Shown here: in pieces, positions 27,201-59,096 of the stretch
Layout of the letters: every line of letters begins with the position of its first letter
Numbering within the stretch: position 1 is the first letter of the stretch
IMG/VR virus record: IMGVR_UViG_3300023174_002543
Span: 1 to 64,000 of that record
Reading direction: 5' to 3' (one strand)
Length of the DNA: 64,000 nt
Notes under the pieces: generated by a model
Databases searched by the model: none
The model's input: the letters and a program-made list of their open reading frames with translations, nothing else
Told to the model about the DNA's origin: nothing
Translations under genes and position numbers: made by a program

Positions 27201-30200
27201 TGGTATGGTTTTACCTCATTGATATAATCACCCAATAAAGTAGTGTTATCTACATGATAGTTTACTTCTTGTTGTAATTCACGTACGGTGTATGTTACAT
27301 CCGCAAAGCTAGTTTTATTCAACCATGGTAAATAGTTATTTCCATCATCGTTCTCGCTTTGAATATATTCAAACATCAATATCAAACTCTTGTTACGATG
27401 CTCTAGTAACGGTCCGGTAAAGATTTGTTCATTTAAAGCGCGGATAATATAATAAGTTTCTACTGCAGGGAATGTATCGAACACATCAGTATCAAAGAAG
27501 TTGTCTCCAAATCCAATCTTATTAATTTGGTAATCCCATAATTTATTTGAGAATTCAATTGTACCATCTTGTAAACCAATACGTTTCCATGCACCGTTTG
27601 TGTACAAATGTACTTCACGTTTGCCTTGACCATTTTTAGCTACGCCGGCTATCAACCCCTCAACTGCATCTAACTTATATAAGTCAGAGTACATACCTAC
27701 TTCAACTTTTGTCTTCGTCTTATTATCATAACCGGTTGCCCACCAGTATATATTTGACCAATATATACTAGCATCAAAATAAGCACCGGTTGCTGACAAA
27801 TATGTTAGATTACTAAACTCATTAATGGGGTATTTGGATAGTATGTCATTGGCGTATTCTAAGTAATTTTTTAATGCTCCAAATCTATCAATAAACATAC
27901 TCTGTCTTGGTCTTACACCAATACCAGTTTGCATATAGTCCGGTAATGTGTAATTAGGTACGCTAGCACCAGTCTCATCTATACCAGCAAAACTTTCTAA
28001 GAATCTATTATACAATCCTTCAGGGTTAATTTGTCCAAAAGCATAGTTTGGCAATCCAGGTAAGAAGTCACTAGGACTATTACTTTGAATCAATCTAAAT
28101 TGGTTTTGTATTGTTGACTCGCTTGTTCCAGTGCTAAACCCAAGATGCATATTTGTATTCACACCATTAATATAATCACGTACATTATATAATGCAAAGG
28201 TATCACTACGTAAAGGTGACATGTATGCAATTCCTGAATTTTGAGGACTTGTAATATATCTTTCTAGGATGCTATCAGTTAACGTTTTGTCACCGTGTAA
28301 CTTATTAGTATTTCTTACCCAATAAAAATATTTCTGCACTAAACCGTTATTGTTATTAACACCATACGCAGTTGCATATTTTGTTAGATTATAGGGAGTG
28401 CCTGGTCCTGTGTAATTTACAGGAGTAACACTACTTTCAATCCAAGTATATACAGTTACATCACTACCCGGGAATATTTGACCCCAGTACTTAGCGTTGT
28501 ATGCCAAATCATTTTGATGGTAGTTTAAAAACTTAGTTGTACTAGTATTGAACCAAGTTTTACCTACTTGCTTGATGCTCCATAACATTGAGTTAGTCAT
28601 TGAATTAGTAGTATTGTATCCTGCTGGATCAGTGATGCCAATAAAATCTAAATTCTGTCTTACTGCACCCAATAACTTACCACGTAACGGATCAATATAA
28701 TCTAAGCTAACTAGATTTGCATCTGTAATGTTGTTATATAATTGAACCTTTTGTATTTGATTTACATCTACAACGTTTGTTGAAGTTCTGTGTATGCTCC
28801 AGTTTTGATTTCCAGAAGTATTTTCAAATACATTAACTCTTCCACCAATTGTTCCTTCTCTGAAACCAGGACTACCGATCATTACGATATTATCATTGAA
28901 TGATACACTATTACCATATAAAGGCTCAGCACCATATACTAGTGTATTATCATTGACTGGTTGTGCGTAAACATACTGACCTGAGTTTGCAAAACTTTCA
29001 TTATATGGTTTGATATAATCAAACATATATGCGGCGCCTGCGTTATAGAATACATCTTCAAACGTAGTAAGATTCAAATCAAACACAGTATTATAATGTA
29101 TATCATCACTAAATTTGTCAAAGAATGTGCCTGCATAGCGATTTGATTTCGGTGCAGTAACTACAAAACTGTTTTGCTCATTAAACGCAACTCTATATCC
29201 AAACATACTATTATGCTGCGGATGAGGTTCTCTGATTATTTGAGTTTTAGTATAAGGTGCCATTCCTAATTCATAGAAATAGTTACCATTAAATGCGGTC
29301 ACGTTAAGTTTGTTATTGTCAGAACCCAATTCAACGTTTAATAAACGTATTACTAATCTACCATCTTCGGTTACATAAGCAAATACATTTGGTACTTGAG
29401 TATTATTAATCTGATCCGCAATGTAATATGCATCACGGTCAACTGATATATCTAAGTATACTGAGTATCCATTGATAAACAAGTAAGTAACATCACTATT
29501 GATATGCGCTATGTTTGCTCCTATCAATGCAATCATATATCCATAACGCTTGCCTTCATTAGTAAAGCGGTATACTGCTCCCTCTTGTCCAGGAACAGTG
29601 TGGTCGTATGGAGTACCAATCAATACTTCACTACCGGTTGTGTTCGTTGCAATACTAGTACCAAAACGCTGACTAGGTATAACACCGTTAATATCTTCAT
29701 AACTTGACATTACTTGCATCAACACTAGGTTAGGACTGCTTACAGTAACAAGGTCACCGGCTTTAACTCTAACTGCAAGTTGTATAGCAATGCCACCTAC
29801 AATTGCATATTGTTTACTTGATAATGGCACACCGTTTAGTGTTACAATAGTAGTTGGAGCAAAGTTCCACGGCAATACAACTGCAAAATCTTCAAATTCT
29901 TGAGGGGTATATTGAACTTGGAATGTTTCTATTAATCTATCGAATACCCAAACAACACCAACGTCCGGTACAGGTGGAACTTGTACATCTGGGCTTAGTC
30001 TTACATGATAAGTAGGCGAACCAATGAATATTTTACTTGCATCATGGTTTACAGCAATAGTTGCACCAAAGTTGTCATCACTCTGATGTATTACTGAATT
30101 GCTTGTTGGATCGTCAGGATCACTTAAATCACCGGGGTTCTTACCTAAGTTAAACGCATCGTAACTTAACATATTGAAAGAACCAATGAAATTAAATTGA

Positions 30201-33200
30201 TTGTTTACTGTATTGATATACGTGTCATATACGTACTTTTCTGGATTAGGAGTATTACCATCTAATGAAGGTATACGTGTAATGCTAATGCTATAACCAA
30301 TACGCTCTACAGTATGAATTTTAGTCGTGTCAGTAGTTGCATCATATTCACCAGTCAATACTGTCAAATACGTAGGTAACATATTGGTGTATGTGAATAC
30401 TTTAGCTGAAAGTCCAGTAAATGACGTTTGTGCGTACTGATCCAAAGCTATGAATAATTGTGCATACATGACGGCTGCAAAAAATTCATTAATGTATACC
30501 TTTGTGGTATTACTACCACTACTATAAAAAGCATTAACATTCTTAGTAGTTACATAATCTTTATTATCAACAGAGGGATCTAACGCAAAGTGGGTTCCCG
30601 ATTCACTTATATCACCGGTAATCACGACATAATATTTTCTACGGTCTGTACCAAAGATTCCATTAGCTGAATCTATAGTAGCAGCCTTTGCTGCGTTGGT
30701 AGACCAGGTTACAGATGCTTCACCCGAACCAGTTTGTCCTGTATAATTAGTGTTTAATGTTATGGTTTTTGTAGTAGTTCCGGTTACATTAGATATAGTG
30801 TAATTATTACCACTAATTCTAATTGCACTACCTATCATAGCAGTGCTAACAGTAGATGATGTACTGGTTGTGATAGAACTACCATTTGTTACAGATATTT
30901 GTATATTGATTGAATTATTATCGTATCCAAATCCCTGCAATACACTTAGACCGGTGCTTGTTTCAAGTTGTCTATATTGCAAGAATGTAATTCGTTTACC
31001 TGCAGGGATAGCGTTAACTGCGTTTCCTTTAACAACAAAGAATTTATCCAATGGATTAGTAGTAGCTATCAATTGTCCTACTTCTGGTTGAGGGTCATAT
31101 GTCATTGTTCCATATGTACCATTTTCACCTTTAGTCCATGTACCTGCTATAGTAACTTCAATTGAAATTACTTGATTTGCAAAACCTGGCTTAGTAGTAA
31201 TACCAGTAACAACATGATTTTTGTTAATTTTTACGCCGGTGCTAGTTACTGCAGGAGTAAATCCTGATAATGTTACAGTAGTACCAACATTTACCTTACT
31301 AGTAAGTGCAAAACTAGTACCAGCAAATCGGAAAGTCATTGTACCTGCTGTAGGGGTATTTGCGGTTACACTACTTATAGCTAATAGAGAACTGTTAGTA
31401 ACTGCGGCTGGCAATAATGTATAATCAACTTGTTTCTGGAAATAGAACACACTATTGATTTTAGGTGCACCAACAAACAGATAGTTACTATCACCACTGA
31501 ACGCCATACTAGTACCAACATAGGTTCCACTAACTGTTAATACTTGTTCAGCAACTAATGCTTCAACCTCAGGTAGTGCAACAATTCTATAAATGTGTAA
31601 TTTACTTACTGTGTCACTTGGTTCACTAATAATCATAAACTCGCTATTGCGAGCCATAGCAGTTCCGTAACCTACGCCATGAGTTATTGTATCAGTTTTC
31701 AAATCACCCTGACCACTGCGAATGTATTTGTAAACTTTACCTTTGCCTGGATCACTTATATAGTAACCTAAAGGTGGCATATATGCTACTGCTGCACCCA
31801 ATGAACCGTTATTAATATCAAATATATCGAAACCAATATCTTTATAATTATTAGTCTTTTGATAAACTGCCCAATTGTTTATTGATGCTTGGTCTATCCA
31901 AACTTTTGCACTGTCATATTCGAAATTAATCAATGGCAATGTGTTTATTTTAGTTGGTGAGCTAATTCTTAATGACTGGAACTTATATAACAATGACTGC
32001 TTGGTAAATGTTATAGTTGTTACATTAGATTGTAATGAAAGATTAATTGATACTGCTGTATTACTTACAACTTGCTGTACAATATAAAATCCATTTACAA
32101 TAGTGTTAGTAATAGGATCACTGTTAACAATTGCTATAACATCGTTTGTAACTAAGCCATGTGGTAACAAAAATACTAAAATACAAGTATCATTTAAATT
32201 GTTGACCAGTGACACAAGACGATTAGCCAAGCCAACTGGAGTGTAAATATTCCAATCATTTAGTTTATCTGCTATCCAAATATAATCATTTTTATAAACA
32301 TAATTGATTACACTGTCAGATATACGTTCAACTGTGTATGAATATAATCTAACGTCATCTAAATTAGCATAGCCTGCACTAGGTAACTTAGTTATGCTAC
32401 TATCAGTAACAGTAGGTAATATGTTTGAATTCGCTATTAATCTGCCATAATTCTTTATAGTATAAAGCGGCACTTGTTGTTGTGATATGTCTACATGATT
32501 GCCTCTTGTTATACTAACAATAGCCGGGTTACCAGTTAGTAGGTGTTCGTCTAAGGTAAATTCTATAAAGTTGTGGTTTAGTATGCCTCCATATTCGGCA
32601 GTCTTAATAGACCAATTTTCTTTTACATCGTATGCTAGATTATTGTTTTGTATAGTAGCGCCTTGGAACATGTTGACAACATCTAATGTTCCTTTTTCTG
32701 CTATCATATTTTTGTATATGTTTACCTGAGATACATCATCCAAATCTGCGCTGCTAAGGTAACTACGTGGTCTGTAACCAATCAACGAGAATCCTAATAT
32801 GTCTCCGTCATTTTGAATGTTGCTTCTATGTGTATCATAGTAATACTCTGCTTCGCTTGCACGTGTGCTAGGGTTAGCTAATATACCGGTACTAATTTTA
32901 TCGTAACTAGTCAATATCCAATCGTTATAATCAAAAACATTACTTGGGACTATTACTAACTTATTAGCCATCCAATATTTGCGTTTGTACAATACAATTG
33001 TACCTTTGGTATACTTAGTATTTTCTTTCCAATTGACTACATTATTTTGATTTTGAATAAAGCCAGGTGCATATAATGTGCCATCCCATTGATTAGTTTT
33101 ATTTCCTCTGATATACAATCTTTGCTGACGCAATCCAGTAATTAGATTATAGAGAATATCATTGAATACTGTCTGGTTATCAAAAATAACTATGTGTTCT

Positions 33201-36200
33201 GAAATACTAGTATCTGCACGTAGATAACTAATTGTATCCCCGTTAGTAAGTACCTTCATTTGAAACGTGGTATTTTTTCTGTAGATAGCCAAATCATTTA
33301 GTTTTATAGGTACTAAATTCTGATTCAATACAAAGTTTTGTTGATACAATGTAAATGGTTGCAGAATTCCAACTTCTTTTTCTACGTGAAAATAATTTGA
33401 ACATGGATTCAAATTAATAACACTTCCTGTTTCCCAACCAGTACGAACCCAATATAGCATTTCTGCTATCATTTGATTCCAGTCAAGTACTGTGTTATTT
33501 TCTACATCATCAAACACTACACCGCGGGACTCTAAGTAGTTACCATAACCTGCTAAGAAATTAGCTAACTCTGTTATAGTTTTAAATTGATGTCCATACG
33601 TTACATACTGTAGTTGGGTTGAAAAATCAGTATCTACATAAACTAGTAAATCAATAACTTTTATTAATTTTTGTTTTGTTTTTGGATTAGGTACACTTGA
33701 AATAAAGTATGTTTGGTTTTGACTATTTCCATATACTCTATAACCATATTCAGTTTTTTGTATAATAACAGAACTATAAATGATACTATCATTTGGTTCA
33801 TTTTGATAATGTAAAATGGTGTAGCTGTCATCAGGTACAACCAATGAAGTATTAGAACTGTTCGGTGATCCTTTTTCTATATAGAAGTTTATTTTGTCTT
33901 TATCGGTATATCCACTAATTCTATACGACAATCTAACATCTACATATGCAAGTAAATCTTCAATAATAGTAGTACCTGCTAAACCATATTGGTATAGATA
34001 ATCAATAATCCAGTTCGTATAACTGTGTTTGACGCTTCTATCATCATGTCCGTATAGTTTAGGTTGTACACCCGTACTTCTAAATCTATCGTAAACTAAG
34101 TATTGACGGAATTCGTAGTTATATTTGTAAACATCTAAATCTAAACCTAATGTAAAGAATTGTGCTGGCTTTGCTAATGCAAATATTCGCATTAAATCAA
34201 ATGGCCATGTTGAACTTTTTAGATAGCTATACTCTGCTGGACCCACATCACCGATTGCCCATTCATTATTGAATGTCATTTTGCTATAGTTACGAACCAC
34301 AGATTCAAACGGGCTTATTAGTTCACCTTTGCTATTGACCGGTAGTACGTCTAATAATTTAGGGCGAGCATATCTATCATCAACATATGGATTACCATTA
34401 TTGTATATGTAGCCGTTACTTAAATCAGTCCACAATAATAAATTATCACTTGTGTATGGGCCTAGACCATAACGGTCGTCCCACCATATTGGTTTAACTG
34501 GTAAGCCTAACATCTCCCAGGGAGTGGCATGAGGTGATGCAGTATCATAGAACCATAAATAGATACCTCTCCAGTTACCTTGTTTGAAAGCTGTGTTATC
34601 TACTTTATTTTTTGCTTTATTATAATTCCATGTATACTCATTTGAAGTATCATAGTACTGTACTGCAATATCTACACGATTCAATCCTATCCAGTTTAAG
34701 AAACTGGTAGTATATAATTGCATAACTTGGTCATACGTATAATCTGTAGTTCTAAATTGGCCCGGGAACACATCTGCATATGTTAATGGGATTTTAGCAT
34801 CAACTTTAATGTTATTATAGATTCTGCATTCAAACTCAAATAATACCTTATCCCTAAAATCAATTAGATTACCATAATCATCAAAACCATCATATAATTT
34901 TGTTAGACTACCATCATGTCCCTTAATAAAATATGTAGGTCTCAAATAAGTTTGGTCTAAGATAATTTCAGGAATAAATTTAGGATATAGTCCTAATTTG
35001 GTAGGAGTGTTAGGAATATAACTACCATATGTTTGACTATATTCTTTAACTGTTACAACATCTCCGTCTTGTAACTGAGTCGAAATTATTAGATATGGTT
35101 GAGATTCGTTAACAAAATAATCAACATCCTTTAATAATTGTGAATATCGCATTATTCCGTTAACCATTTTACTAACATAAATTAATACCGATTCATAATT
35201 TGCAATAGTAAAGTTGTATACTTTTGATAACGGATAAACTGTATTACTAATACCAATTGCAAACGTATAACTGTTTACGACAGTAGGAGTTTTACACGGT
35301 AACATGTCTCCCCAAAAGAATGGGGTTGATTGAGTTTTTGAACTAGATATAATGTCTAATACATCATCTAGCATATTACTAGCACTATCGTAAGGTGTAT
35401 AGTCTTGTGAGTTTACTGTGTTAACTAATAATGATTTAAACTTTACATACTCGGTTGCATTATAACCAAGGCTATTAAAAAAGTTTGTGTCTTGTCTACG
35501 AATAAATGCTGCTGATGTTACAATAGATGCGCTATTTTGAATAATTCTAGTACCGTATGGTACTGGATTACCTAAATCTCTATAATTATTTGCACCAAAA
35601 CTTTCGCCGGCTAAGTTAGGTATATTATTACAAATGCTCTTATAGTGGCCTCTTATGTCACCTGCATTAATTGTAGTGGTTTGATAATTGAATGGATTTT
35701 GTTGTAAGTTACTTGGTACCTCATAGTATCCAATATTACTTACGCTATCGCTATATACTTTAACTGTTACCGAGTCACCAGGAGTTAAAGTTTTTGTAAT
35801 AGTCACATGTGTTTCATCACCTACTATAGCGGTAGTATATTCAGAAATCCTAGCATTGTTTACATAAACTACGCTTGTAGGCCAAGCAGTAGAGAAGCTA
35901 TCTTTAATTGGAACATCTAATACAAATGTATTGTTTGTGTTATTATTATAGAATGTAAAATTGAAGATTTGATATTGAAAACTCGTATCAGCCGCAGTCT
36001 CCCATCCTATTTTTCTAATATAATGTGTTTTATCTACGTATTGATATGCATAGCCGTAGTTTACCGGTTGGTTAATACTTTGACCATTATATACAAAATT
36101 AAATGTTTTGCTATTCAAAGTAGCTTCAAAGTTAATATCGTTTAAATTTCCTACACCACTATATTGAATAGGCAAACCTAATACAGGATCTTTAACTCCT

Positions 36201-38416
36201 GATCCAACACTATACTGGAATAAGGTACATCCATTAAAATCTGTTCCTGGATAATAATTACCATCACTAAAACTTATACCGTTACTATCAAACAAATCAA
36301 ATAATGGTGCTTGATTTACCGTGGTTTTAGTTTGACTAACTATCCAACCATACCCGTCGTACTTGTAATTATAGCCCTTATTAGTTACTCCGTTAACTAT
36401 TACTATTTGGTCATCAAACAAAATGTCGCCGTCACTGGCTTTAGTTAATGTAACAACTCTAGCATTATTAACTGTTGCAATAGTTGTTACAAAAATTTTA
36501 TTTCTTACTTCTATATCAGCATCATTAGCAAATATAATTCTACATCCATCAAACAATGCTGAATCTTCACCGTCCGGTAAATAATCATCAAAGCCTCCGC
36601 CTGTTATAGTAGCTAACGCATCAATGGTTGTAGTATCAATATAATCAACTGGGGCTTTACCAAAGTTACCGTGATATAATAATTTTAAATTTGGATAGAA
36701 TTCAATAATAGGTCTTTTTGCTCTACTAGAACCAGCGGTCAATGCTTTATTAGCAATAGGACTTAGCAGGTTATTATCTACGATTGTTTTTAATACATCT
36801 ACATGGAACCAACGATTACCCCTAGTCCAACCATTTCTGTCAAGGCTACTACGATTGATAGTAATATAATCAGGAGTATAAGGTAAATTAATTACATCAC
36901 TAAATCCAATTTGGTCAAATGCACTTGCAGGATCGTCAAAGGGAGCCCCAAATGCTTGACTATATAATTCTGGAACAATTAACTCACTACTAGGTATAAG
37001 TTGTATACTAGTACCTACGCCCTCTACATAATATGAATCATTTAAATAATTAGTTGGAAAAATATTTCCTGTAAACTTAACTCTTAGTCCGTTTGAGAAT
37101 TTAATGCCATTAGGACTGGTGTATGACTTTTGACCTATTATATCAAATATATCAATTACTGCATCAACAGCATTATCTATAAGTTTAATCTTACCAAATT
37201 TATTCGGGCTAGCTTCGTCCTGGTAGTATAGAGTACTAAGTGTTGCGGTATTAGGCGGAATCAATAATATTTCACCATAACTATTTTTAACAAAACTTCT
37301 ACCTATATATTCTACACCACTACCAATTACAATATTATTATTATCTGCAATGACACTACTAGGGATTAGTTTAACAACTGGATAAGCGTCATCACCTACT
37401 AATGTGATTTTAAATACAGTACCTGTTACGGGTTCATTTTCATAACCATCATAACCCGGTGTAGGAGAATTAGAATCATCAAATCCATTACTATCAAAAA
37501 ATTCACCAATAGCAACTCTATTGTTAGGATCTTCTCCGTAGAATATTAATGTTTTACCATTAATATCAACTACTCCGTCAATGTTTTTAATTTCACTTAG
37601 TGCTACACCGTTAACTTTATCAAAACTCAATGTAGATACTAAATCTACAGGTATTAAACCAGGAAACTTATAACTATCTTGTGCGTCACTTTCAGGCACA
37701 TTATATACAAATCTTCCTGAACTTAAACCGTTAAATTCAATACCACTAATATCTCTAGTACTAAAATTAGTTTTATTTGGATCTACACCGTCCATGCCAG
37801 GTAATGACTGAATCCAAAATTTACTTGTATCATCAACTATAAATGTATAAGTACCACCGCGAACTAATGTCAACGTTGGATTTTTTGTAGGTAATAATTT
37901 TCCGTTAACTTCAAATTGGTATGTGTTGACATTAGAAATAACTTTAATAGTTGCAACTTCTAATACTGTTTCGGTTGTAATATCAACACTTTCAGGACCT
38001 TCTGGAATCCAATAGTATTGACCAAAATTAATTAGTTTATCTAAATCAACAAAACTATCCCAACTATAAAACTCATTCTTAAACAAACTATTATGATTAG
38101 GTTGCAATCCGCTTTCTAATCTAAGTGCATCAATGATGCCTGGATAAGTGATTGCGTCTTTTACTTTTCCTGTAACAGAATCTGTTATTACAACAGTTGG
38201 ATCTAATTGATAATTGGTTTTATCAAGGGTGGGTTCTTGTACGTACTGATCCGTTGACTTTACTCCATATCCAAACTTACTACCAATGTATCCTTGTACT
38301 TTTCTGAAGTCCGGCGGTTGAACTAATTGATCCAATGTTGCAGCTAAAAACTGGTCATTGGTGTTTGTTTGAAATATTTCTGGTAAGAAATCAATGGTTC
38401 TTATTCTTGTTGCCAT
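21233..38416 (-). CDS. Giant (5727 aa) baseplate wedge/fibre structural protein (gp7-like position)
   Basis: Uninterrupted 17.2-kb ORF after gp6. Contains YINEVKPYHT, FG-GAP-like propeller repeats, SxDGxxW Asp-box repeats and repeated fibre modules. Confidence 0.7.
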   Translation of the reverse strand: MATRIRTIDFLPEIFQTNTNDQFLAATLDQLVQPPDFRKVQGYIGSKFGYGVKSTDQYVQEPTLDKTNYQLDPTVVITDSVTGKVKDAITYPGIIDALRLESGLQPNHNSLFKNEFYSWDSFVDLDKLINFGQYYWIPEGPESVDITTETVLEVATIKVISNVNTYQFEVNGKLLPTKNPTLTLVRGGTYTFIVDDTSKFWIQSLPGMDGVDPNKTNFSTRDISGIEFNGLSSGRFVYNVPESDAQDSYKFPGLIPVDLVSTLSFDKVNGVALSEIKNIDGVVDINGKTLIFYGEDPNNRVAIGEFFDSNGFDDSNSPTPGYDGYENEPVTGTVFKITLVGDDAYPVVKLIPSSVIADNNNIVIGSGVEYIGRSFVKNSYGEILLIPPNTATLSTLYYQDEASPNKFGKIKLIDNAVDAVIDIFDIIGQKSYTSPNGIKFSNGLRVKFTGNIFPTNYLNDSYYVEGVGTSIQLIPSSELIVPELYSQAFGAPFDDPASAFDQIGFSDVINLPYTPDYITINRSSLDRNGWTRGNRWFHVDVLKTIVDNNLLSPIANKALTAGSSRAKRPIIEFYPNLKLLYHGNFGKAPVDYIDTTTIDALATITGGGFDDYLPDGEDSALFDGCRIIFANDADIEVRNKIFVTTIATVNNARVVTLTKASDGDILFDDQIVIVNGVTNKGYNYKYDGYGWIVSQTKTTVNQAPLFDLFDSNGISFSDGNYYPGTDFNGCTLFQYSVGSGVKDPVLGLPIQYSGVGNLNDINFEATLNSKTFNFVYNGQSINQPVNYGYAYQYVDKTHYIRKIGWETAADTSFQYQIFNFTFYNNNTNNTFVLDVPIKDSFSTAWPTSVVYVNNARISEYTTAIVGDETHVTITKTLTPGDSVTVKVYSDSVSNIGYYEVPSNLQQNPFNYQTTTINAGDIRGHYKSICNNIPNLAGESFGANNYRDLGNPVPYGTRIIQNSASIVTSAAFIRRQDTNFFNSLGYNATEYVKFKSLLVNTVNSQDYTPYDSASNMLDDVLDIISSSKTQSTPFFWGDMLPCKTPTVVNSYTFAIGISNTVYPLSKVYNFTIANYESVLIYVSKMVNGIMRYSQLLKDVDYFVNESQPYLIISTQLQDGDVVTVKEYSQTYGSYIPNTPTKLGLYPKFIPEIILDQTYLRPTYFIKGHDGSLTKLYDGFDDYGNLIDFRDKVLFEFECRIYNNIKVDAKIPLTYADVFPGQFRTTDYTYDQVMQLYTTSFLNWIGLNRVDIAVQYYDTSNEYTWNYNKAKNKVDNTAFKQGNWRGIYLWFYDTASPHATPWEMLGLPVKPIWWDDRYGLGPYTSDNLLLWTDLSNGYIYNNGNPYVDDRYARPKLLDVLPVNSKGELISPFESVVRNYSKMTFNNEWAIGDVGPAEYSYLKSSTWPFDLMRIFALAKPAQFFTLGLDLDVYKYNYEFRQYLVYDRFRSTGVQPKLYGHDDRSVKHSYTNWIIDYLYQYGLAGTTIIEDLLAYVDVRLSYRISGYTDKDKINFYIEKGSPNSSNTSLVVPDDSYTILHYQNEPNDSIIYSSVIIQKTEYGYRVYGNSQNQTYFISSVPNPKTKQKLIKVIDLLVYVDTDFSTQLQYVTYGHQFKTITELANFLAGYGNYLESRGVVFDDVENNTVLDWNQMIAEMLYWVRTGWETGSVINLNPCSNYFHVEKEVGILQPFTLYQQNFVLNQNLVPIKLNDLAIYRKNTTFQMKVLTNGDTISYLRADTSISEHIVIFDNQTVFNDILYNLITGLRQQRLYIRGNKTNQWDGTLYAPGFIQNQNNVVNWKENTKYTKGTIVLYKRKYWMANKLVIVPSNVFDYNDWILTSYDKISTGILANPSTRASEAEYYYDTHRSNIQNDGDILGFSLIGYRPRSYLSSADLDDVSQVNIYKNMIAEKGTLDVVNMFQGATIQNNNLAYDVKENWSIKTAEYGGILNHNFIEFTLDEHLLTGNPAIVSITRGNHVDISQQQVPLYTIKNYGRLIANSNILPTVTDSSITKLPSAGYANLDDVRLYSYTVERISDSVINYVYKNDYIWIADKLNDWNIYTPVGLANRLVSLVNNLNDTCILVFLLPHGLVTNDVIAIVNSDPITNTIVNGFYIVQQVVSNTAVSINLSLQSNVTTITFTKQSLLYKFQSLRISSPTKINTLPLINFEYDSAKVWIDQASINNWAVYQKTNNYKDIGFDIFDINNGSLGAAVAYMPPLGYYISDPGKGKVYKYIRSGQGDLKTDTITHGVGYGTAMARNSEFMIISEPSDTVSKLHIYRIVALPEVEALVAEQVLTVSGTYVGTSMAFSGDSNYLFVGAPKINSVFYFQKQVDYTLLPAAVTNSSLLAISSVTANTPTAGTMTFRFAGTSFALTSKVNVGTTVTLSGFTPAVTSTGVKINKNHVVTGITTKPGFANQVISIEVTIAGTWTKGENGTYGTMTYDPQPEVGQLIATTNPLDKFFVVKGNAVNAIPAGKRITFLQYRQLETSTGLSVLQGFGYDNNSINIQISVTNGSSITTSTSSTVSTAMIGSAIRISGNNYTISNVTGTTTKTITLNTNYTGQTGSGEASVTWSTNAAKAATIDSANGIFGTDRRKYYVVITGDISESGTHFALDPSVDNKDYVTTKNVNAFYSSGSNTTKVYINEFFAAVMYAQLFIALDQYAQTSFTGLSAKVFTYTNMLPTYLTVLTGEYDATTDTTKIHTVERIGYSISITRIPSLDGNTPNPEKYVYDTYINTVNNQFNFIGSFNMLSYDAFNLGKNPGDLSDPDDPTSNSVIHQSDDNFGATIAVNHDASKIFIGSPTYHVRLSPDVQVPPVPDVGVVWVFDRLIETFQVQYTPQEFEDFAVVLPWNFAPTTIVTLNGVPLSSKQYAIVGGIAIQLAVRVKAGDLVTVSSPNLVLMQVMSSYEDINGVIPSQRFGTSIATNTTGSEVLIGTPYDHTVPGQEGAVYRFTNEGKRYGYMIALIGANIAHINSDVTYLFINGYSVYLDISVDRDAYYIADQINNTQVPNVFAYVTEDGRLVIRLLNVELGSDNNKLNVTAFNGNYFYELGMAPYTKTQIIREPHPQHNSMFGYRVAFNEQNSFVVTAPKSNRYAGTFFDKFSDDIHYNTVFDLNLTTFEDVFYNAGAAYMFDYIKPYNESFANSGQYVYAQPVNDNTLVYGAEPLYGNSVSFNDNIVMIGSPGFREGTIGGRVNVFENTSGNQNWSIHRTSTNVVDVNQIQKVQLYNNITDANLVSLDYIDPLRGKLLGAVRQNLDFIGITDPAGYNTTNSMTNSMLWSIKQVGKTWFNTSTTKFLNYHQNDLAYNAKYWGQIFPGSDVTVYTWIESSVTPVNYTGPGTPYNLTKYATAYGVNNNNGLVQKYFYWVRNTNKLHGDKTLTDSILERYITSPQNSGIAYMSPLRSDTFALYNVRDYINGVNTNMHLGFSTGTSESTIQNQFRLIQSNSPSDFLPGLPNYAFGQINPEGLYNRFLESFAGIDETGASVPNYTLPDYMQTGIGVRPRQSMFIDRFGALKNYLEYANDILSKYPINEFSNLTYLSATGAYFDASIYWSNIYWWATGYDNKTKTKVEVGMYSDLYKLDAVEGLIAGVAKNGQGKREVHLYTNGAWKRIGLQDGTIEFSNKLWDYQINKIGFGDNFFDTDVFDTFPAVETYYIIRALNEQIFTGPLLEHRNKSLILMFEYIQSENDDGNNYLPWLNKTSFADVTYTVRELQQEVNYHVDNTTLLGDYINEVKPYHTVIKDFDLRYTNTDVVYSNTSDFDIPPVYNSKTGKFTSPQMKFINPNNYKNEYNVGDAVWNDSNYINWYNHYGLALNGIPGFELGVLTFYMTPTSNTLTIDNARGMPDTGILYIENEIVGYASVNRETGLVSGLTRGINNSFVSDHYPGLIITTDLPGAVVLDSGRGYIDPPRVTAYIDTTKYPAPTREAVLQPVMSGGKVIAIDILDPGENYSVTPEILFTSSYDVSFTQTNLNFINNTILIPSTILDTGDLIKAKCIDGVGSIKDGYYYVYVIAQLEGQELISITLHKTLSASLIGSNRIKLNPGTVNTTITGNEYVFSITARAIAITTNLNVRGIRNTLRFDRTSYIPKVVPWEPNKFWGSQYFQYGIENINSTSSNVSLYYGKPYPGLTGTVTNPGNSTGTGAIFTVTNVLLGGTYNATMTNSGSNYGVFDKITIPGSTLSGITPTHNCYINVSTVSSFYRDLLQDTTTGTGTNARFNITVNGYSEELTGTLTVTNGSITVTGTNTLFYTEVAAGSIIHINGVQCTVASVPANVSSDPDFNVKLTLTTGYTGASGTYTARVAVSEYVAEIDSVFYPGSGYAQGDTIKITGDRLNGTSPANDLTINVSRVDGNGKILLAAAATGLGLGTAVMKGSIKTFTVSGIALDSNFASLQGAVMPILSVNNDHGVTQDISGNVIVRLDYFPSSLEPGQIQGAKTYFYHNSAPYLYTDTDGTRIEINRPKFNPYDVTLGYFIKIINGGSTYHVNQEVIVPGALLGGTTGLNDVIITVQQISDPVSNLTYGFIGGIAEATVTGISAKVFDIYYVHPISLSEVQVFSDPGMMRPVKYNDFNYKHNIDFVDYTPETAGTEVDYLVEYQTHGLTNISDFAYIPEPFTLGLSYKYDFSSIVTYANRIWRCIDSNNDTFFDPYKWVELSSDDRSINALDRIVAYYTPAINMPAKDLQQLVRGISYPGNVYYGNSFSPEDIIPIDVTLKGQELYPRTLNIKVIINNTILLTGALSLVNGSSDVTGIGTLFNAELSYDASIYIDEVEYVVVDVRNNYSITLASPYIGDNIITSAYKYQYVAIGESDTNSLFLTSVDGISWNSHILSENSLNVTDIIYADEKYLVSTRSTNNPMLISYNGTTWAGQGEATLFDSNIGYDNDNFDSSPQSYPADNVNKVIYGSDNFYYGVGSFVTRSVDGIVWYKQYDFGTKTLNTIYDIAEVNTAAFKGFIAVGSGNQILSGADTAAPTVTKASVIINSLDGRVWTLQTPYLTPSALNLVISNSDVVVVGGSNGKLWYSVNGYNWLSCIIAGSPITYTLNSGVYQNSRFIVVGEHGTILTSTDGINWTQRTDNSLTVDNLSNVMYDGLYYYIVGNNATIIRSSNTINWVNVSLLNPAEPDSVVAGDDFLYGYGPEELVPGLMTESLSIKVVTSPGASWDDTPLLPASAYYQNTSFGMKSITSTTNTVNFGKLLKNPAQVSVFLIDSVTKLGNRIYTGYTVNWITKVVTLTSSLPAGKTLMVEAYEVGNGKQTARGSTTYTPLRVDSNTGYSEVYINKPFAPLIIAPVVYHNGVQLLFQTDYDLSFTEDINLSKLVFHTLYDEDTDYITWTILDTSISDFRDSEVTYSIPETQTFTGSTSKTKLLTNNLGGSNIDNAIVEKNGLRLVPVVDYSIDFATSTMTLVSNPITSDTISVTTFNETDRLFLETMIYTATASQTVFDLEQFVTDVTKDNIYYTDVNKAWVTINGKRVGSSKLSYDNANHLTINASISAGDIVMISVTTDGDTPNRMQFNIDVDRYGQTTVYRTNDGDGTWLTEDFNLGDTVMHLHDVTPIMDTVIQDSTVISEDSLIIAYIECDATQVRRSTVRDVTTSSIVTNYNLQVIRGRSALVFENTSQVSLGDQLSVTLNIGNTIELNGEKIRYTQVDFVLNTIGGLTRGVLGTGPVLYNPRYNEVYGLTKNRTLDSKYNSVIWNSSNYADNFGDPLQISNTKAATFLRYGHY

Positions 38417-55028: not shown

Positions 55029-55420
55029 GTTGTCAGACCTCCTTGAGATTGTACAGATTGTGCTGTGCCGTCAGATTCTGGAGTATGCATGTATTAGCAT
55101 GTATCTATTATATATGGTAGCGAATATATAATGTTTACAATGTTAGCATGGAACACCGAGAAGGCTCTTCAGATAGGAAACCTTCAATGAGTCTATATTT
55201 TACTCCATCAATTGGAATATAGAACATGCGTTGCTGAGATGTTAAATGATTTTAAGTTTAATAGTCTCACTACAGACCCATAATTAGCTTATAGGGCAAC
55301 CGGTGTCACATAGTAACTAAAGGCGTTGACTATGTGGGGTATAGATGGCAAAGGATGACGGGCATGGCAAGTTTTTCCATTGGTAGTGCTTAGACTGCAC
55401 TACCATGGCTTCTAAGCGGC
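55023..55420 (+). ncRNA. Putative large structured non-coding RNA, family unidentified
   Basis: No credible ORF. Nested long-range helices (55061-73/55356-69, 55153-58/55301-06, 55230-35/55295-300) and at least six hairpins; G-U pairs favour the + strand. Confidence 0.6.
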
Positions 55421-55484
55421 AAATAGTATTAAAGCATATAAGATATGCCTAAAGTAATTAAGAGTAAAGGAAGAGTTGTAAGAC

Positions 55485-55545
55485 TAACCGAATCTAATTA
55501 CGAACGAAGTGAGTAATTAGTGAAGGTTAATGACCGAAGGTCATT
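55485..55545. other. Tandem GAA-loop hairpins between convergent transcription units
   Basis: CTAATTAC/GTAATTAG (55494-501/55513-20) around ACGAAGT, and AATGACC-GAA-GGTCATT (55529-45). Confidence 0.5.
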
Positions 55546-55591
55546 CGTAATGAGTTAGGACTTAATGATAAATGAATAGGTACGGATATGA

Positions 55592-55768
55592 TTAGAAGAA
55601 TGGTAAGCCCGTTTTCTTTGTAGTATCCATATTTTCTGATATAAGTTGTGCAATCATGTTTCGTTCATCAATGCTCATATTCATGATATCGGTATAGCTA
55701 ACACCGCCCCTCATATGCCATGTTAGTTTAAGTGACTGATTTTTTATATTAGCCACTTCTTTTTCCAT
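55592..55768 (-). CDS. Baseplate hub assembly protein (gp51-like); probably also the -1 frameshift extension of gp26
   Basis: Not in the ORF track. MEKEVANIKNQSLKLTWHMRGGVSYTDIMNMSIDERNMIAQLISENMDTTKKTGLPFF; the frame stays open back to the slippery site. Confidence 0.75.
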   Translation of the reverse strand: MEKEVANIKNQSLKLTWHMRGGVSYTDIMNMSIDERNMIAQLISENMDTTKKTGLPFF

Positions 55769-55815
55769 TTGCGATATTAGGCTCTTAATTTCTTCGGAAT
55801 TAGAAAGTAAAAGCC

Positions 55816-56646
55816 TTAACCGAAAAAAGTTGAAACGTTGATTACAAATCCTTGTTCATATTGATGTGAACAATGCATACATGATATTTGTAATGGTTTA
55901 GCTTCAGCCTCAGTTCTAAGTTGAATATTAGATTCTTTTATGATATTGAAAGTATTCTTATCACAGTTTCTTAAAAATTCTTCAATATGTTCTTTTTCAA
56001 GTACAGTTGCACTTGGTGTTTTGATATATTCTATCGTAGATAGTAATAATGTTATTGTCATTTCATTCAATCTTTTTATGACAGATGTAGTTTGCTTACT
56101 TTTTTCTTCCTCATCTGTTATGGCTTGTAGATTAGCCATTAATCGTTGAACTTCAAATTGCAATATATTCGAATCGTTAACTTCACTGTATTTCAATGGT
56201 TTGAATTTTACACCCAATTCTCCTACTGTCAATAATTTACTATAGTCACTAGGTTTGAAACTTGCTAATACCCCAGTAAGGTTTACATCATATTTTGCTT
56301 CTTCTTCACAACTTGGGCAAGTTGTTTCTATTTCCATCTTATCACCGTTACTTGCGGCACGGATTGCAATTAGTATCGGGTCTAAATCTATAACAGGTAT
56401 ACTCCATGGGTCAATGATATTTGGAACACAGCTTCTGATTATATCAGCTACTGCCGTTCCATTAAACAATGCATCCGGGGTTCTGCTGGTAATCTCATCA
56501 ATTGTAGTCATTGGATAAATAGGTACTTCTCCGTTATCGGGTAAGTTTATACTACCTTCTTCATATCCCAATCCTCCGCTAGGTAGCTTTAAGTATACTG
56601 CTGGTCTACGAAAATATTGTTGTAATGGGTTTACTGCTTCACTCAT
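55816..56646 (-). CDS. gp26: Baseplate hub assembly chaperone (gp26-like)
   Basis: YLKLPS, PMTTIDE, DLDPILIAIRAAS, two CxxC motifs and a C-terminal FFG. Confidence 0.75.
   Translation of the reverse strand: MSEAVNPLQQYFRRPAVYLKLPSGGLGYEEGSINLPDNGEVPIYPMTTIDEITSRTPDALFNGTAVADIIRSCVPNIIDPWSIPVIDLDPILIAIRAASNGDKMEIETTCPSCEEEAKYDVNLTGVLASFKPSDYSKLLTVGELGVKFKPLKYSEVNDSNILQFEVQRLMANLQAITDEEEKSKQTTSVIKRLNEMTITLLLSTIEYIKTPSATVLEKEHIEEFLRNCDKNTFNIIKESNIQLRTEAEAKPLQISCMHCSHQYEQGFVINVSTFFG
55822..55828 (-). other. Putative -1 programmed frameshift slippery heptamer T TTT TTC
   Basis: X XXY YYZ pattern in the correct phase just before the gp26-like stop codon; the -1 frame runs into the gp51-like ORF. 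Confidence 0.65.
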
Positions 56647-56676: not shown

Positions 56677-56704
56677 ACTAAATACTATGTATTTTCTATT
56701 TATA
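56677..56704. promoter_or_regulatory. Divergent late promoters: ACTAAATA (+, 56677..56684) and TATAAATA (-, 56697..56704)
   Basis: Both lie in the intergenic gap between the divergent gp26 and tape measure genes. Confidence 0.5.
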
Positions 56705-56729: not shown

Positions 56730-59096
56730 ATGATAGCCGCTGCAGCCGCAATTGAAGAAGCCTTAGCATTACTGTCCGCAGGTACTGCTGAAGCCAGCGC
56801 CGGCGCCAGAGCAGCTGGTGCAGGTCTAAACGATTTAGATAAATCTACCAATACCGTCAGCCGAACGTTAGGGGTTGATTTTGTAAAATCAATTAGAGAA
56901 ACTATTAAAAAATTAGATGAATTAGCTGACGAAATTATTCAACTAAAAGGCGGTGCAGAAAAATACGGAAAGCAAAACGACTCGCTAATTGCCGGAGCGA
57001 TAATTTATGACCAAATATTAAAAGAAAACTATAAATCAGCAATGGGCATGACAGCCGCTGCTTTGGTCTTTAATGATACGTTAATGTCTTTTACTAAGGC
57101 TGCGTTAAAACAAAATGACCTATTAGTTAAAGGATATCAAAAATTAAGTGAATTTGGTGCAGTAGATAGTACGGGATTACGCGGAGTATTAGATACTATT
57201 AAGCGTGTAGGAGCATCACCTGAGACAATGGATTTTGTGCTGTCTACTATTCAAAGGCATAGTGAAGACCTAGCAATATTTGGTGGCACTGTGTCACAAG
57301 GAGCAAAGAGATTTACTTCTGTAGTAGAAGGTTTATTAGATCCTGCTGACAGCGCATACCAAGCATTAACTAATTTAGGCTATACCAACGAAGACATATT
57401 AAAATATGCCGGTAGTTATGCATCGCAAACATCTAGGATGATGAATTCATCAGCTAAAGATACTGCTTTGTTAAAACAAGAAACAATGGCATATTTGGTA
57501 ACTCTGGCTGAATTAGCAGAATTGACTGGCGTAAGTCGTGACCAACAAATGGCCGCAGCAGAAGAATTAAAAAGAACAACTGAATGGAGATTATACCTTC
57601 GACAACTAGAACAATCAGGTCAGGGAGATCTAGCAAACACATTACGTGAATCTATGACAATTATTATGGCTAAGAATAAAGACCAAGGTTTAGCTATTCT
57701 AGACAGGATATTGAATAAAGGCCCGACAACTGAGAAAAGTGCCGCAATGGGGTTGCAAGTAGATAATGCAACAAGAGTAATGATGGACCTAGCTAGGTCC
57801 GGTGCAGATGCTGCTACAATTACTAGTGGTACTATTAAACGACTAGGGACCGATTCAGCTAAAGTGCTGGATACATTTGGTACTACTCTAGGGTTAAGCA
57901 AAGAATTTCAACAACGCATGGGTGTAACAGATAAAACGTTTGACATGGAGGCTCTGAGTAAGGGACAAGATGCAGCACTTGCGTCAGTTAAGGCAAACAC
58001 TAAACTAATGACAGAGACAGGCGATGCAGCTCTAAACTCTGAGGCAAGACGTAAACAGCTAGAAATGGCTTATGCAAATTATCAACAAGAACTGTATTTT
58101 AACATGGCTAAAACAGCAGTACCTGCAATGGAACTGTTTGTACAGGGTTTAATTAAATTGGCTAAAGGAATGGATTATGTTTATCCAGAACTACTAAGAC
58201 CAGCTGAAGCCCTTAAGGAATTTGACAAACTAGATAAAGCAAATAAGTTAAACGATATAACAAAAGAGCAGATTGAAACTACACAAAAATTAATTGCAAA
58301 TCAAAAATCAATTATAGAACAAGAAAAAATAATAGCACAAGAAAAAGCAAAGGGGCAGGCGGGAGATGCTGATGCTCAAAAAAGATTAGCCCAACATAAT
58401 GAAAAACTTAAAGAACTTCAACGTCAAAGAGAACAATTAGAAAAAACAGCTAATGAAGCAAATGAAAAATCTAATAAACTTAAACAAGCTAGTAATACTA
58501 CTCAATCATCTAATAATACTCAAAATGTAAATGAGTTACTGGCAGGATTAAGAATTAAACAAGGACCTGAGGGTGCATTAAGACCGGGTGGAACAGTTCT
58601 ACCCGAAACTGCAAAAGCTGCACAAGAATTTGCTAAACTGTTTCCTAACTATACACAATTCAATGCATTTGATGACAAGCATCATCAGGGTAAAGGTGGT
58701 AGTCTACATCCAACAGGTAGAGCGTTTGATGTAGGTGTTACTGAAAAACCAAGTGATGCAGTACTAAATGACCTTAAAGAAAAATTAAAAGAGTTTGGTG
58801 TTACTAATTTAAAATACGAATCAAAAGGTGAACAAGGGTCAACTGGTAATCATATTCATGTTGAAGTAGATCCAACTCAGTTTAAGAGTAAAAAAGTTTC
58901 TATGAGTGTACCTGACTATAGTACAATGGATAACACTAATATGGCAAAAACAAATATACAACCAAATTCAGTTGTAGGTCAAGTGGGTCAAGACAATACA
59001 ATAATGGTATCAAAACTAGATGATTTAAAAACATTATTTGATAAGTCATTGAGAGTACAAGAGGAAATTCTTACTCATACCAAGCTATTAGCATAA
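56730..59096 (+). CDS. Tape-measure-like protein with C-terminal M15/LAS-type Zn peptidase domain
   Basis: Ala-rich helical body; SLHPTGRAFDV...GNHIHVEV (H-x6-D and HxH). Confidence 0.65.
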   Translation: MIAAAAAIEEALALLSAGTAEASAGARAAGAGLNDLDKSTNTVSRTLGVDFVKSIRETIKKLDELADEIIQLKGGAEKYGKQNDSLIAGAIIYDQILKENYKSAMGMTAAALVFNDTLMSFTKAALKQNDLLVKGYQKLSEFGAVDSTGLRGVLDTIKRVGASPETMDFVLSTIQRHSEDLAIFGGTVSQGAKRFTSVVEGLLDPADSAYQALTNLGYTNEDILKYAGSYASQTSRMMNSSAKDTALLKQETMAYLVTLAELAELTGVSRDQQMAAAEELKRTTEWRLYLRQLEQSGQGDLANTLRESMTIIMAKNKDQGLAILDRILNKGPTTEKSAAMGLQVDNATRVMMDLARSGADAATITSGTIKRLGTDSAKVLDTFGTTLGLSKEFQQRMGVTDKTFDMEALSKGQDAALASVKANTKLMTETGDAALNSEARRKQLEMAYANYQQELYFNMAKTAVPAMELFVQGLIKLAKGMDYVYPELLRPAEALKEFDKLDKANKLNDITKEQIETTQKLIANQKSIIEQEKIIAQEKAKGQAGDADAQKRLAQHNEKLKELQRQREQLEKTANEANEKSNKLKQASNTTQSSNNTQNVNELLAGLRIKQGPEGALRPGGTVLPETAKAAQEFAKLFPNYTQFNAFDDKHHQGKGGSLHPTGRAFDVGVTEKPSDAVLNDLKEKLKEFGVTNLKYESKGEQGSTGNHIHVEVDPTQFKSKKVSMSVPDYSTMDNTNMAKTNIQPNSVVGQVGQDNTIMVSKLDDLKTLFDKSLRVQEEILTHTKLLA

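What the first reader, a model, noticed from the sequence alone, without database searches (positions are those of the whole stretch)
55592..56646. Probable -1 ribosomal frameshift fusing gp26-like and gp51-like ORFs (lambda G/GT-type tail chaperone logic in a T4-like phage)
Seen in sequence: the gp26-like gene ends ACT TTT TTC GGT TAA. Slipping -1 on T TTT TTC gives FF-RLRLLLSNSEEIKSLISQ-MEKEV..., open straight into the unannotated 58-aa ORF, which has no convincing SD. The fusion would be about 351 aa. The pair is adjacent (divergent) to the tape measure gene. Established: tail assembly chaperones next to tape measure genes are commonly made as frameshift pairs (lambda G/GT, P2 E/E'). Inference: these ORFs are such a chaperone pair.
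Basis: partly seen in the sequence, partly recalled or inferred. Interest (0 to 1): 0.62.

Follow-up and report, generated by a model that had tools for sequence, protein, structure and literature searches.

The report
Frameshifted tail chaperone gene, T4-type
A freshwater jumbo phage makes a short and a long form of its T4-type tail assembly chaperone from one gene by slipping back one base on a run of T's; the signal is real and strongly conserved, but this arrangement has already been described for T4-like phages.

Summary
On the minus strand, a 276-aa gp26-like gene (56646..55816, Pfam PF12322) ends ACT TTT TTC GGT TAA. The -1 frame is open from the heptamer (55828..55822) to 55595, giving a 351-aa fusion. 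The signal is conserved well beyond chance. In 99 non-identical relatives, the codon before the run always ends in T, although it is one of 8 different codons. The second Phe codon is always TTC, against 24% elsewhere in the same genes. The -1 peptide is conserved even where no start codon exists. A stem-loop follows 5-6 nt downstream. T4 carries two paralogues instead: gp26 (short) and gp51 (the same domain plus a C-terminal tail). The window's genome and four other genomes that carry the run have one copy each. So the 0-frame product corresponds to gp26 and the transframe product to gp51. This matches a published account (Vladimirov, Gautam and Davidson 2022), which I could read only through citing papers. 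The window is a new, unannotated member of a known kind. Still open: whether the shift is ribosomal (favoured) or transcriptional, and whether the 788-aa neighbour is the tape measure protein (probable).

The parts
55816..56646 (-). Zero-frame gene, 276 aa including the stop codon. It is the short isoform, a T4 gp26-like tail assembly chaperone (TAC-N).
   Evidence: PF12322 E 4.5e-19 and phrog_150 E 3.2e-23. AF2 model pLDDT 88.7. BFVD fold matches to gp26/gp51-type baseplate hub proteins of many myoviruses. It is the only PF12322 gene in the 367-kb genome.
55822..55828 (-). Slippery heptamer T_TTT_TTC, in X_XXY_YYZ register in the zero frame. The zero-frame stop follows one codon later.
   Evidence: In 99 non-identical relatives the preceding codon is NNT in 99/99 (8 different codons) and the second Phe codon is TTC in 99/99, against 24% TTC elsewhere.
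55779..55816 (-). Stem-loop (9 + 5 bp with a 1x1 internal loop) that begins 5 nt 3' of the heptamer. It is the candidate frameshift stimulator.
   Evidence: MFE -15.3 kcal/mol, z -3.5. The 50 nt downstream of the heptamer fold better than control windows across relatives. In 10 close relatives, 89% of cells are paired against 41-67% when slid, with 7 double-sided changes reached by 0/500 shuffles.
55595..55828 (-). -1 frame coding stretch of 78 codons, including the two shared Phe codons. It comprises a linker and a helical C-terminal domain; its stop is at 55592-55594.
   Evidence: The peptide is conserved across relatives: FFR.RLL..SE.IK.LI...W[YH]MRGG.SY.D..NMS..ER..I..II.EN.ETTKK..LPFF. 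Differences by -1-frame codon position run 3rd > 1st > 2nd, also in the linker. AF2 model is helical, pLDDT 83.
55592..55768 (-). The 58-aa ATG-started ORF that a gene caller would report. It is best read as the 3' part of the long isoform, not as a gene of its own.
   Evidence: Its ATG is not conserved (Tyr in L003, Leu in L004-L008), while the peptide upstream of it is. It has no Pfam or PHROG hit.
56730..59096 (+). Divergent 788-aa neighbour, a probable tape measure protein. It may carry an M15/VanY-like peptidase domain near residues 600-714.
   Evidence: The nearest named atlas clusters are tape measure proteins (scores 0.88-0.90, a lead only). It is syntenic with 720-800-aa virion proteins of RaK2, 121Q, PA5oct and GAP32. 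No significant pairwise similarity to T4 gp29 or to the RaK2 or PA5oct proteins.
56697..56704 (-). TATAAATA, the T4 late-promoter consensus, 51 nt upstream of the chaperone's ATG.
   Evidence: It is one of only 3 copies in 64 kb, against 15.8 expected. No function is shown.

Best explanation
One gene gives two nested proteins. Most ribosomes read the zero frame and stop at 55816, making a 276-aa gp26-like chaperone. A minority slip back one base on U_UUU_UUC. Both Phe-tRNAs re-pair with UUU, helped by a stem-loop 5-6 nt downstream. These ribosomes continue with Arg (CGG) in the -1 frame and make a 351-aa protein that carries an extra helical C-terminal domain of about 75 aa. The pair corresponds to T4 gp26 (short) and gp51 (long), which T4 encodes as two paralogous genes. 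By analogy with lambda G/GT and the T4 genetics, the short form would coat or hold the tape measure protein or hub components, and the rarer long form would act in small amounts to couple them to the growing hub and tube. Neither would end up in the virion. Shown here: the sequence features, their conservation, and the homology to gp26 and gp51. Inferred: that the shift is ribosomal, its efficiency, and the binding partners.
For: The heptamer and the open -1 frame are present in every relative examined in the jumbo-phage and cyanophage groups. In many loci the -1 frame is closed by TGA immediately 5' of the run and has no start codon before the conserved domain. There is nucleotide-level constraint at synonymous sites. 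Substitutions in the linker and the domain follow the coding pattern of the -1 frame. A downstream hairpin is enriched (mean z -2.1 vs -0.3, p 2e-5; cyanophage type -2.3 vs -0.5, p 9e-16) and shows compensatory changes in close relatives. T4 gp26 and gp51 both match PF12322 and resemble each other (BLASTP E 2e-6). The gp51 tail and the cyanophage -1 extension both match phrog_634. T4 has two PF12322 copies; the window's genome, S-PM2, RaK2, PA5oct and LIS04 have one each. In SP-15 and LIS04 the homologue sits in the classical chaperone slot, sheath-tube-X-tape measure. The best 120 of 3,779 homologues are all 274-300 aa, apart from one 217-aa sequence; none is about 350 aa, so the interrupted form is the rule among close relatives. 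Citing papers report that Vladimirov et al. 2022 identified the short and long chaperones of T4-like phages and poly-T slip sites in the short-form genes.
Against: No protein or RNA data exist for this phage; only DNA contigs were found. Homology between the window's extension and the gp51/cyanophage tail is marginal at sequence level (profile-profile E about 1e-3, probability 18%; E 0.033 against T4 gp51 alone). It is firm only as far as the RaK2 group (E 1e-14). About half of the relatives lack a clearly stable downstream hairpin, and a fixed-register covariation test over 15 divergent sequences was not significant. In the Thornevirus relatives the homologous extension is in the +1 frame, which -1 ribosomal slippage cannot reach. 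[quoted passage not shown]
Confidence: 0.72

Rival explanations
1. The long form arises by transcriptional slippage. RNA polymerase adds one extra U on the T run, so a fraction of mRNAs encode the fusion in a single frame and the ribosome does not slip.
For: The site is a pure homopolymer. Some lineages have longer runs: T7 in CM1 and Xoo-sp13, T8 in Melnitz, T9 in RsoM2USA. Thornevirus phages need the opposite shift (+1) at a T6 run, and polymerase slippage can give either direction. The title of Vladimirov et al. [quoted passage not shown]
Against: T6 is short for bacterial RNA polymerase slippage, which to my knowledge usually needs 8-9 or more. The run is held at exactly six T's followed by C in 99/99 sequences rather than lengthening. 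The enriched structure lies 3' of the run at the classical spacing for ribosomal stimulators, whereas known slippage-stimulating hairpins lie 5' of the run (my knowledge).
Confidence: 0.2
2. The 58-aa ORF is a separate small gene, as GenBank records annotate its homologues. It would be translated from its own ATG or by re-initiation after the upstream stop.
For: The window has an ATG at 55768. S-PM2, Phosso, 121Q and others have a start codon at or near the stop, and their records carry a separate CDS.
Against: The ATG is replaced by Tyr or Leu codons in close relatives, while the 18 residues upstream of it stay conserved with a coding substitution pattern. The window has no usable Shine-Dalgarno site. 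This reading does not explain the synonymous-site constraint on the heptamer. T4 gp51 shows that the tail is used as a covalent C-terminal extension of the PF12322 domain.
Confidence: 0.05
3. The break is an assembly or sequencing error in a homopolymer, or a decaying gene.
For: Homopolymers are error-prone.
Against: The same interrupted arrangement appears in more than 100 independent assemblies and cultured genomes. Contigs from two studies are identical there. Both frames are under purifying selection.
Confidence: 0.01

Closest known systems
T4 gp26 and gp51 (baseplate hub assembly chaperone and 'catalyst'); reported as the short and long tail assembly chaperones of T4-like phages by Vladimirov, Gautam and Davidson, Virology 2022, as cited in PMC10885494 and PMC12846349
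   Same: Same Pfam domain, PF12322. The short form ends at the same ..FF motif (T4 gp26 ends ..KEFFELL). The long form is the same domain plus a C-terminal tail of about 50-75 aa with the motif SY/YSL..I..M.P.ER. The gene lies next to the hub and tape measure genes.
   Different: T4 and 1,375 Straboviridae-type records carry the long form as a separate in-frame gene, and T4 gene 26 has no slippery run. The window has one gene and needs a shift. The window's tail is only marginally similar in sequence to the gp51 tail.
Cyanophage 'gp26' plus small 'gp51' ORFs (S-PM2 and other Kyanoviridae)
   Same: Same heptamer T_TTT_TTC followed by G or A. The zero-frame stop falls within a few codons, followed by a -1 ORF of about 60 aa and a downstream hairpin.
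   Different: A different virus family with smaller genomes, and the extension belongs to phrog_634. In S-PM2 the genes run in the same direction as a large downstream gene, rather than divergent from it as in the window.
Lambda G/GT and P2 E/E+E' tail assembly chaperones (Levin 1993; Christie 2002; Xu, Hendrix and Duda 2004; from my knowledge and the reference lists seen)
   Same: Two isoforms share an N-terminus. The long one is made by a -1 shift close to the 3' end of the short gene. The genes are associated with the tape measure gene, and the products are assembly factors absent from virions. As I recall it, P2 also slips on a T run (TTTTTTG).
   Different: No sequence or fold similarity was detected: no tail-chaperone Pfam hit and no PDB match. 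The short form here is 276 aa with Cys pairs, far larger than lambda G. In the window the gene is not between the tube and tape measure genes.
Tail assembly chaperone locus of Pakpunavirus and Andersonviridae phages (PMC12846349)
   Same: [quoted passage not shown]
   Different: The motif given there is GTTTTT. I did not test whether those proteins are related to PF12322.

Membership tests
T4 gp26/gp51 family (Pfam PF12322, phrog_150) | Match to the family profile above the curated cut-off | tested here: met
   69.4 bits against a cut-off of 24.5, covering profile positions 9-218 of 219. phrog_150 E 3.2e-23. BFVD fold matches with TM up to 0.91.
T4 gp26/gp51 family (Pfam PF12322, phrog_150) | A short form ending at the conserved FF motif and a long form that continues past it | tested here: met
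   F274 and F275 are invariant in 59 sequences. The -1 continuation is conserved. This holds at sequence level only; no protein was seen.
T4 gp26/gp51 family (Pfam PF12322, phrog_150) | C-terminal tail homologous to the gp51 tail (phrog_634) | tested here: inconclusive
   The window's tail has no phrog_634 hit at E up to 1. Profile-profile comparison with cyanophage tails gives E 1.4e-3, probability 18%, collinear; against T4 gp51 residues 221-246 it gives E 0.033. The link to RaK2-type tails is firm (E 1.3e-14).
Lambda-type tail assembly chaperones (G/GT) | Sequence or fold similarity to known chaperones | tested here: not met
   No tail-chaperone Pfam family at E up to 0.1. No PDB sequence match. 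Foldseek best E 0.5. The VIA-align 2 wide search matched only a generic helical hairpin, residues 150-205.
Lambda-type tail assembly chaperones (G/GT) | [quoted passage not shown] | tested here: met
   The heptamer lies 3 codons before the stop, and a conserved -1 ORF follows.
Lambda-type tail assembly chaperones (G/GT) | Gene located between the tail tube and tape measure genes | tested here: not met
   In the window the gene is divergent from the probable tape measure gene, with recombination nuclease genes on its other side. No PF06841 tube gene was found in the genome. The feature is met in the homologous loci of SP-15 and LIS04.
Lambda-type tail assembly chaperones (G/GT) | Short form binds the tape measure protein; the extension binds the tube protein | not testable with these tools
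Canonical -1 programmed ribosomal frameshift signal | X_XXY_YYZ heptamer in the zero frame | tested here: met
   T_TTT_TTC at 55828..55822. It is conserved in register in 99/99 sequences.
Canonical -1 programmed ribosomal frameshift signal | Stable structure 5-9 nt downstream | tested here: met
   Spacer of 5 nt, -15.3 kcal/mol, z -3.5. Enrichment and covariation in relatives. It is absent or weak in about half of the distant relatives.
Canonical -1 programmed ribosomal frameshift signal | Transframe product detected | not testable with these tools
   No RNA or protein data; only DNA contigs were found.
Transcriptional slippage site | Long homopolymer run (usually 8-9 or more; my knowledge) | tested here: not met
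   The window and 99/99 compared sequences have T6 followed by C. Only a few distant relatives have T7-T9.

The most novel reading that the evidence does not exclude
The shift is a hairpin-assisted ribosomal -1 frameshift on U_UUU_UUC that is shared by jumbo RaK2-like phages, their freshwater relatives and cyanophages. In this reading it is the ancestral way of making the long chaperone, and the separate gp51 gene of T4 arose later by duplication and fusion. The small 'gp51' and 'hypothetical' ORFs in hundreds of public genomes would then be mis-annotated gene fragments. How much of this the 2022 paper already states I could not check.
Probability: 0.5. Interest if true: 0.4.

Novelty: new member of a known kind. 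Interest (0 to 1): 0.3.

Why it matters
It corrects the gene model. The 58-aa ORF is not a gene of its own; it is the end of a 351-aa isoform. The same correction applies to about 20 GenBank records inspected here, none of which annotates a joined CDS. It extends the T4 gp26/gp51 chaperone logic to a 367-kb freshwater jumbo phage and to the RaK2, 121Q, PA5oct and Atu_ph07 groups. It also supplies comparative evidence, from synonymous-site constraint and a downstream hairpin, on whether the shift is ribosomal or transcriptional. That question could be tested in cultivated relatives.

Tried and rejected
RNAalifold gave no useful consensus on 15 divergent sequences or on 10 close ones. The stems sit in two registers, and in a coding region the alignment cannot absorb that with gaps.

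A fixed-register pair count on the divergent set was not better than shuffles. A register taken from L004, applied to the close set, was; the caveat is that I derived that structure from one of those sequences.

DNA-level search of the phage collection found nothing.

The 788-aa neighbour showed no pairwise similarity to T4 gp29 or to the syntenic RaK2 and PA5oct proteins, and no Pfam or PHROG hit. Its tape-measure label therefore rests on position, size and atlas neighbours only.

No tube gene was found with PF06841.

PDB sequence and fold searches for both domains were blank or generic.

It gives no evidence either way.

No RNA runs hold this DNA, so slippage at RNA level could not be examined.

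The Vladimirov 2022 paper is not held.

I did not hand the 351-aa fusion to any tool as typed letters. The two frames were analysed by reference, so the fused protein itself was neither folded nor searched.

Full report
**What is there**

The minus strand of the window carries a 276-aa ORF (56646..55816). It ends ...GTT TCA ACT TTT TTC GGT TAA. Read one base back from T_TTT_TTC (55828..55822), the sequence gives FF-RLRLLLSNSEEIKSLISQ-MEKEV... and stays open to 55595. It therefore runs through the 58-aa ATG-started ORF 55768..55592. The small ORF has no usable Shine-Dalgarno site: the only purine-rich stretch is about 13-17 nt before its ATG.

**What the proteins are**

- The 276-aa protein belongs to the T4 gp26 family: PF12322 at 69 bits against a cut-off of 24.5, and phrog_150.
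- An AlphaFold model built on 59 sequences is confident (pLDDT 88.7). It matches predicted structures of "baseplate hub" and "hub assembly" proteins from many myoviruses.
- It matches no solved structure.
- The 78-residue -1 stretch has no family hit. It is predicted to be helical (pLDDT 83).
- The window is the first 64 kb of a 367,104-bp IMG/VR virus record rated complete. That genome has only this one PF12322 gene.
- Nearby genes are T4-type: portal, prohead protease, late sigma factor, gp46/47-like nuclease, and gp5-, gp25- and gp6-like baseplate proteins.
- The DNA occurs in lake and freshwater metagenomes. Contigs from two studies are identical across the run, with no indel.

**Conservation of the signal**

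- All 24 IMG/VR relatives with a complete 3' end (33-79% protein identity) keep TTTTTTC two to five codons before the stop. All keep an open -1 frame of about 78 codons encoding a conserved peptide.
- In many of them the -1 frame is closed by TGA directly 5' of the run. In several, the window's ATG is replaced by a Tyr or Leu codon. The extension therefore cannot be started independently.
- Pairwise differences fall mostly on third positions of the -1 frame, in the linker as well as in the domain.
- The arrangement recurs in cultured jumbo phages. Atu_ph07, 121Q, PA5oct, RaK2, Phosso, GAP32 and XbC2 have T_TTT_TTC. RsoM2USA, CM1 and Xoo-sp13 have T7-T9 runs.
- Several of these phages share the window's gene order: portal, a 720-800-aa virion protein, then the divergent chaperone gene.
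- The arrangement also recurs in cyanophage S-PM2, in phage Melnitz, and in 80 of 80 cyanophage-type IMG/VR loci.
- Over 99 non-identical genes, the codon before the run is one of eight different codons but always ends in T. The second Phe codon is always TTC, although TTC makes up only 24% of Phe codons elsewhere in the same genes. That constraint acts on the nucleotides, not on the zero-frame protein.
- About 20 GenBank records were inspected. None annotates a joined CDS: they show two separate genes or nothing.

**A downstream structure**

- In the window a 14-bp interrupted stem-loop begins 5 nt after the heptamer (-15.3 kcal/mol, z -3.5).
- Across relatives, the 50 nt after the heptamer fold more stably than control windows from the same genes. 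Mean z is -2.1 against -0.3 (p 2e-5) for the jumbo group, and -2.3 against -0.5 (p 9e-16) for the cyanophage group.
- In ten close relatives a two-part stem of 7 + 5 bp is paired in 89% of cells, against 41-67% when the partner columns are slid. It shows seven double-sided changes, which no shuffle reached.
- The evidence has limits. About half of the distant relatives show no clearly stable hairpin. A fixed-register test on the divergent set failed. The sequences are related to one another, and the arms also encode conserved peptide.

**Relation to T4**

- T4 gp26 (208 aa) and gp51 (249 aa) both match PF12322 over its full length (E 9e-64 and 4e-52). They resemble each other directly (E 2e-6).
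- gp51 continues beyond the domain with a tail that matches phrog_634. The -1 extensions of S-PM2 and Melnitz match the same family (E 8e-29 and 1e-27).
- T4 gene 26 ends ..GAG TTC TTT GAG TTA CTA TAA. The FF motif is there, but the slippery run is not, and gene 25 follows at once.
- T4 has two PF12322 genes. S-PM2, RaK2, PA5oct, LIS04 and the window's genome have one each.
- In-frame gp51 homologues occur in 1,375 Straboviridae-type records.
- The picture is one gene with a shift in most lineages and two paralogous genes in T4 and its close kin.
- The window's own tail is firmly homologous to the RaK2-type tails (E 1e-14). It is only marginally similar to the cyanophage and gp51 tails (E about 1e-3, collinear motif SY..I.NM.P.ER).

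**Chaperone role**

In Bacillus phage SP-15 and Listeria phage LIS04 the PF12322 gene lies in the order sheath, tube, this gene, tape measure. That is the classical slot for a tail assembly chaperone. T4 reviews list gp26 and gp51 as hub assembly chaperones, with gp51 required for assembly but absent from the particle (PMC3004832). In the window the divergent 788-aa neighbour is probably the tape measure protein. That rests on position, size and atlas neighbours, which are leads only; no direct similarity was found.

**Prior knowledge**

My first six literature searches found nothing. A later one led to PRFect (PMC10885494) and a 2025 phage paper (PMC12846349). Both cite Vladimirov, Gautam and Davidson, Virology 2022;566:9-15.

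- According to PRFect, some T4-like phages carry one short chaperone gene and one long gene that fuses the short part with the downstream part, instead of frameshifting.

I could not read the 2022 paper itself. The kind of element is therefore already described. This window adds an unannotated member from a freshwater jumbo phage.

**Mechanism**

I favour ribosomal -1 slippage. The run is in X_XXY_YYZ register, it is held at six T's plus C rather than lengthening, and the enriched structure lies 3' of it at the classical spacing.

Transcriptional slippage remains possible, at about one chance in five. The site is a homopolymer, and some lineages have T7-T9. SP-15 and LIS04 place the homologous extension in the +1 frame after a T6 run, which -1 ribosomal slippage cannot explain. 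The 2022 title also points away from translational frameshifting.

Independent translation of the small ORF is unlikely, and a sequencing error is excluded in practice.

**Not done**

No RNA data were available. The fused 351-aa sequence was not handed to any tool, because it has no reference.

Noticed in passing
window 21233-38416 (-): A single ORF of 5,727 aa, followed by baseplate genes: a gp6-like gene of 1,123 aa, a gp25-like gene, and a gp5-like gene of 1,073 aa.
   Followed up: no
L130:1434-2373 (Bacillus phage SP-15) and L039:1986-2931 (Listeria phage LIS04): The PF12322 gene lies between the tube and tape measure genes. Its homologous C-terminal extension (motif YYIPG.TW...ES.A.FER.E.Y) is in the +1 frame after a T6 run, not the -1 frame. 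It is unannotated in LIS04 and only partly called in SP-15.
   Followed up: partly
window 56730-59096 (+): This 788-aa probable tape measure protein has atlas structure neighbours pointing to an M15/VanY-like peptidase domain at about residues 600-714.
   Followed up: partly
window 56697-56704 (-): TATAAATA, the T4 late promoter consensus, is strongly depleted in the window: 3 copies against 15.8 expected. One copy lies 51 nt upstream of the chaperone gene's start.
   Followed up: partly
window 55029-55591: About 560 nt between two convergent genes has no ORF of 30 aa or more apart from short chance frames. It contains a short inverted repeat (AATGACC..GGTCATT) near 55530. No tRNA and no Rfam match were found.
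   Followed up: partly
L035:3803-4090 (T4 gene 26'): T4 also makes a second, shorter product from gene 26 by internal initiation (annotated 26', 95 aa). T4 thus has nested products at this locus by yet another route.
   Followed up: no
public records seen: Names given to this family are erratic. They include 'Lead, cadmium, zinc and mercury transporting ATPase' (Yersinia phages fHe-Yen9-03 and fHe-Yen9-04) and 'predicted glutamine amidotransferase' (P0095). One record uses the apt 'tape measure protein assembly chaperone' (Acinetobacter phage Berthold).
   Followed up: no
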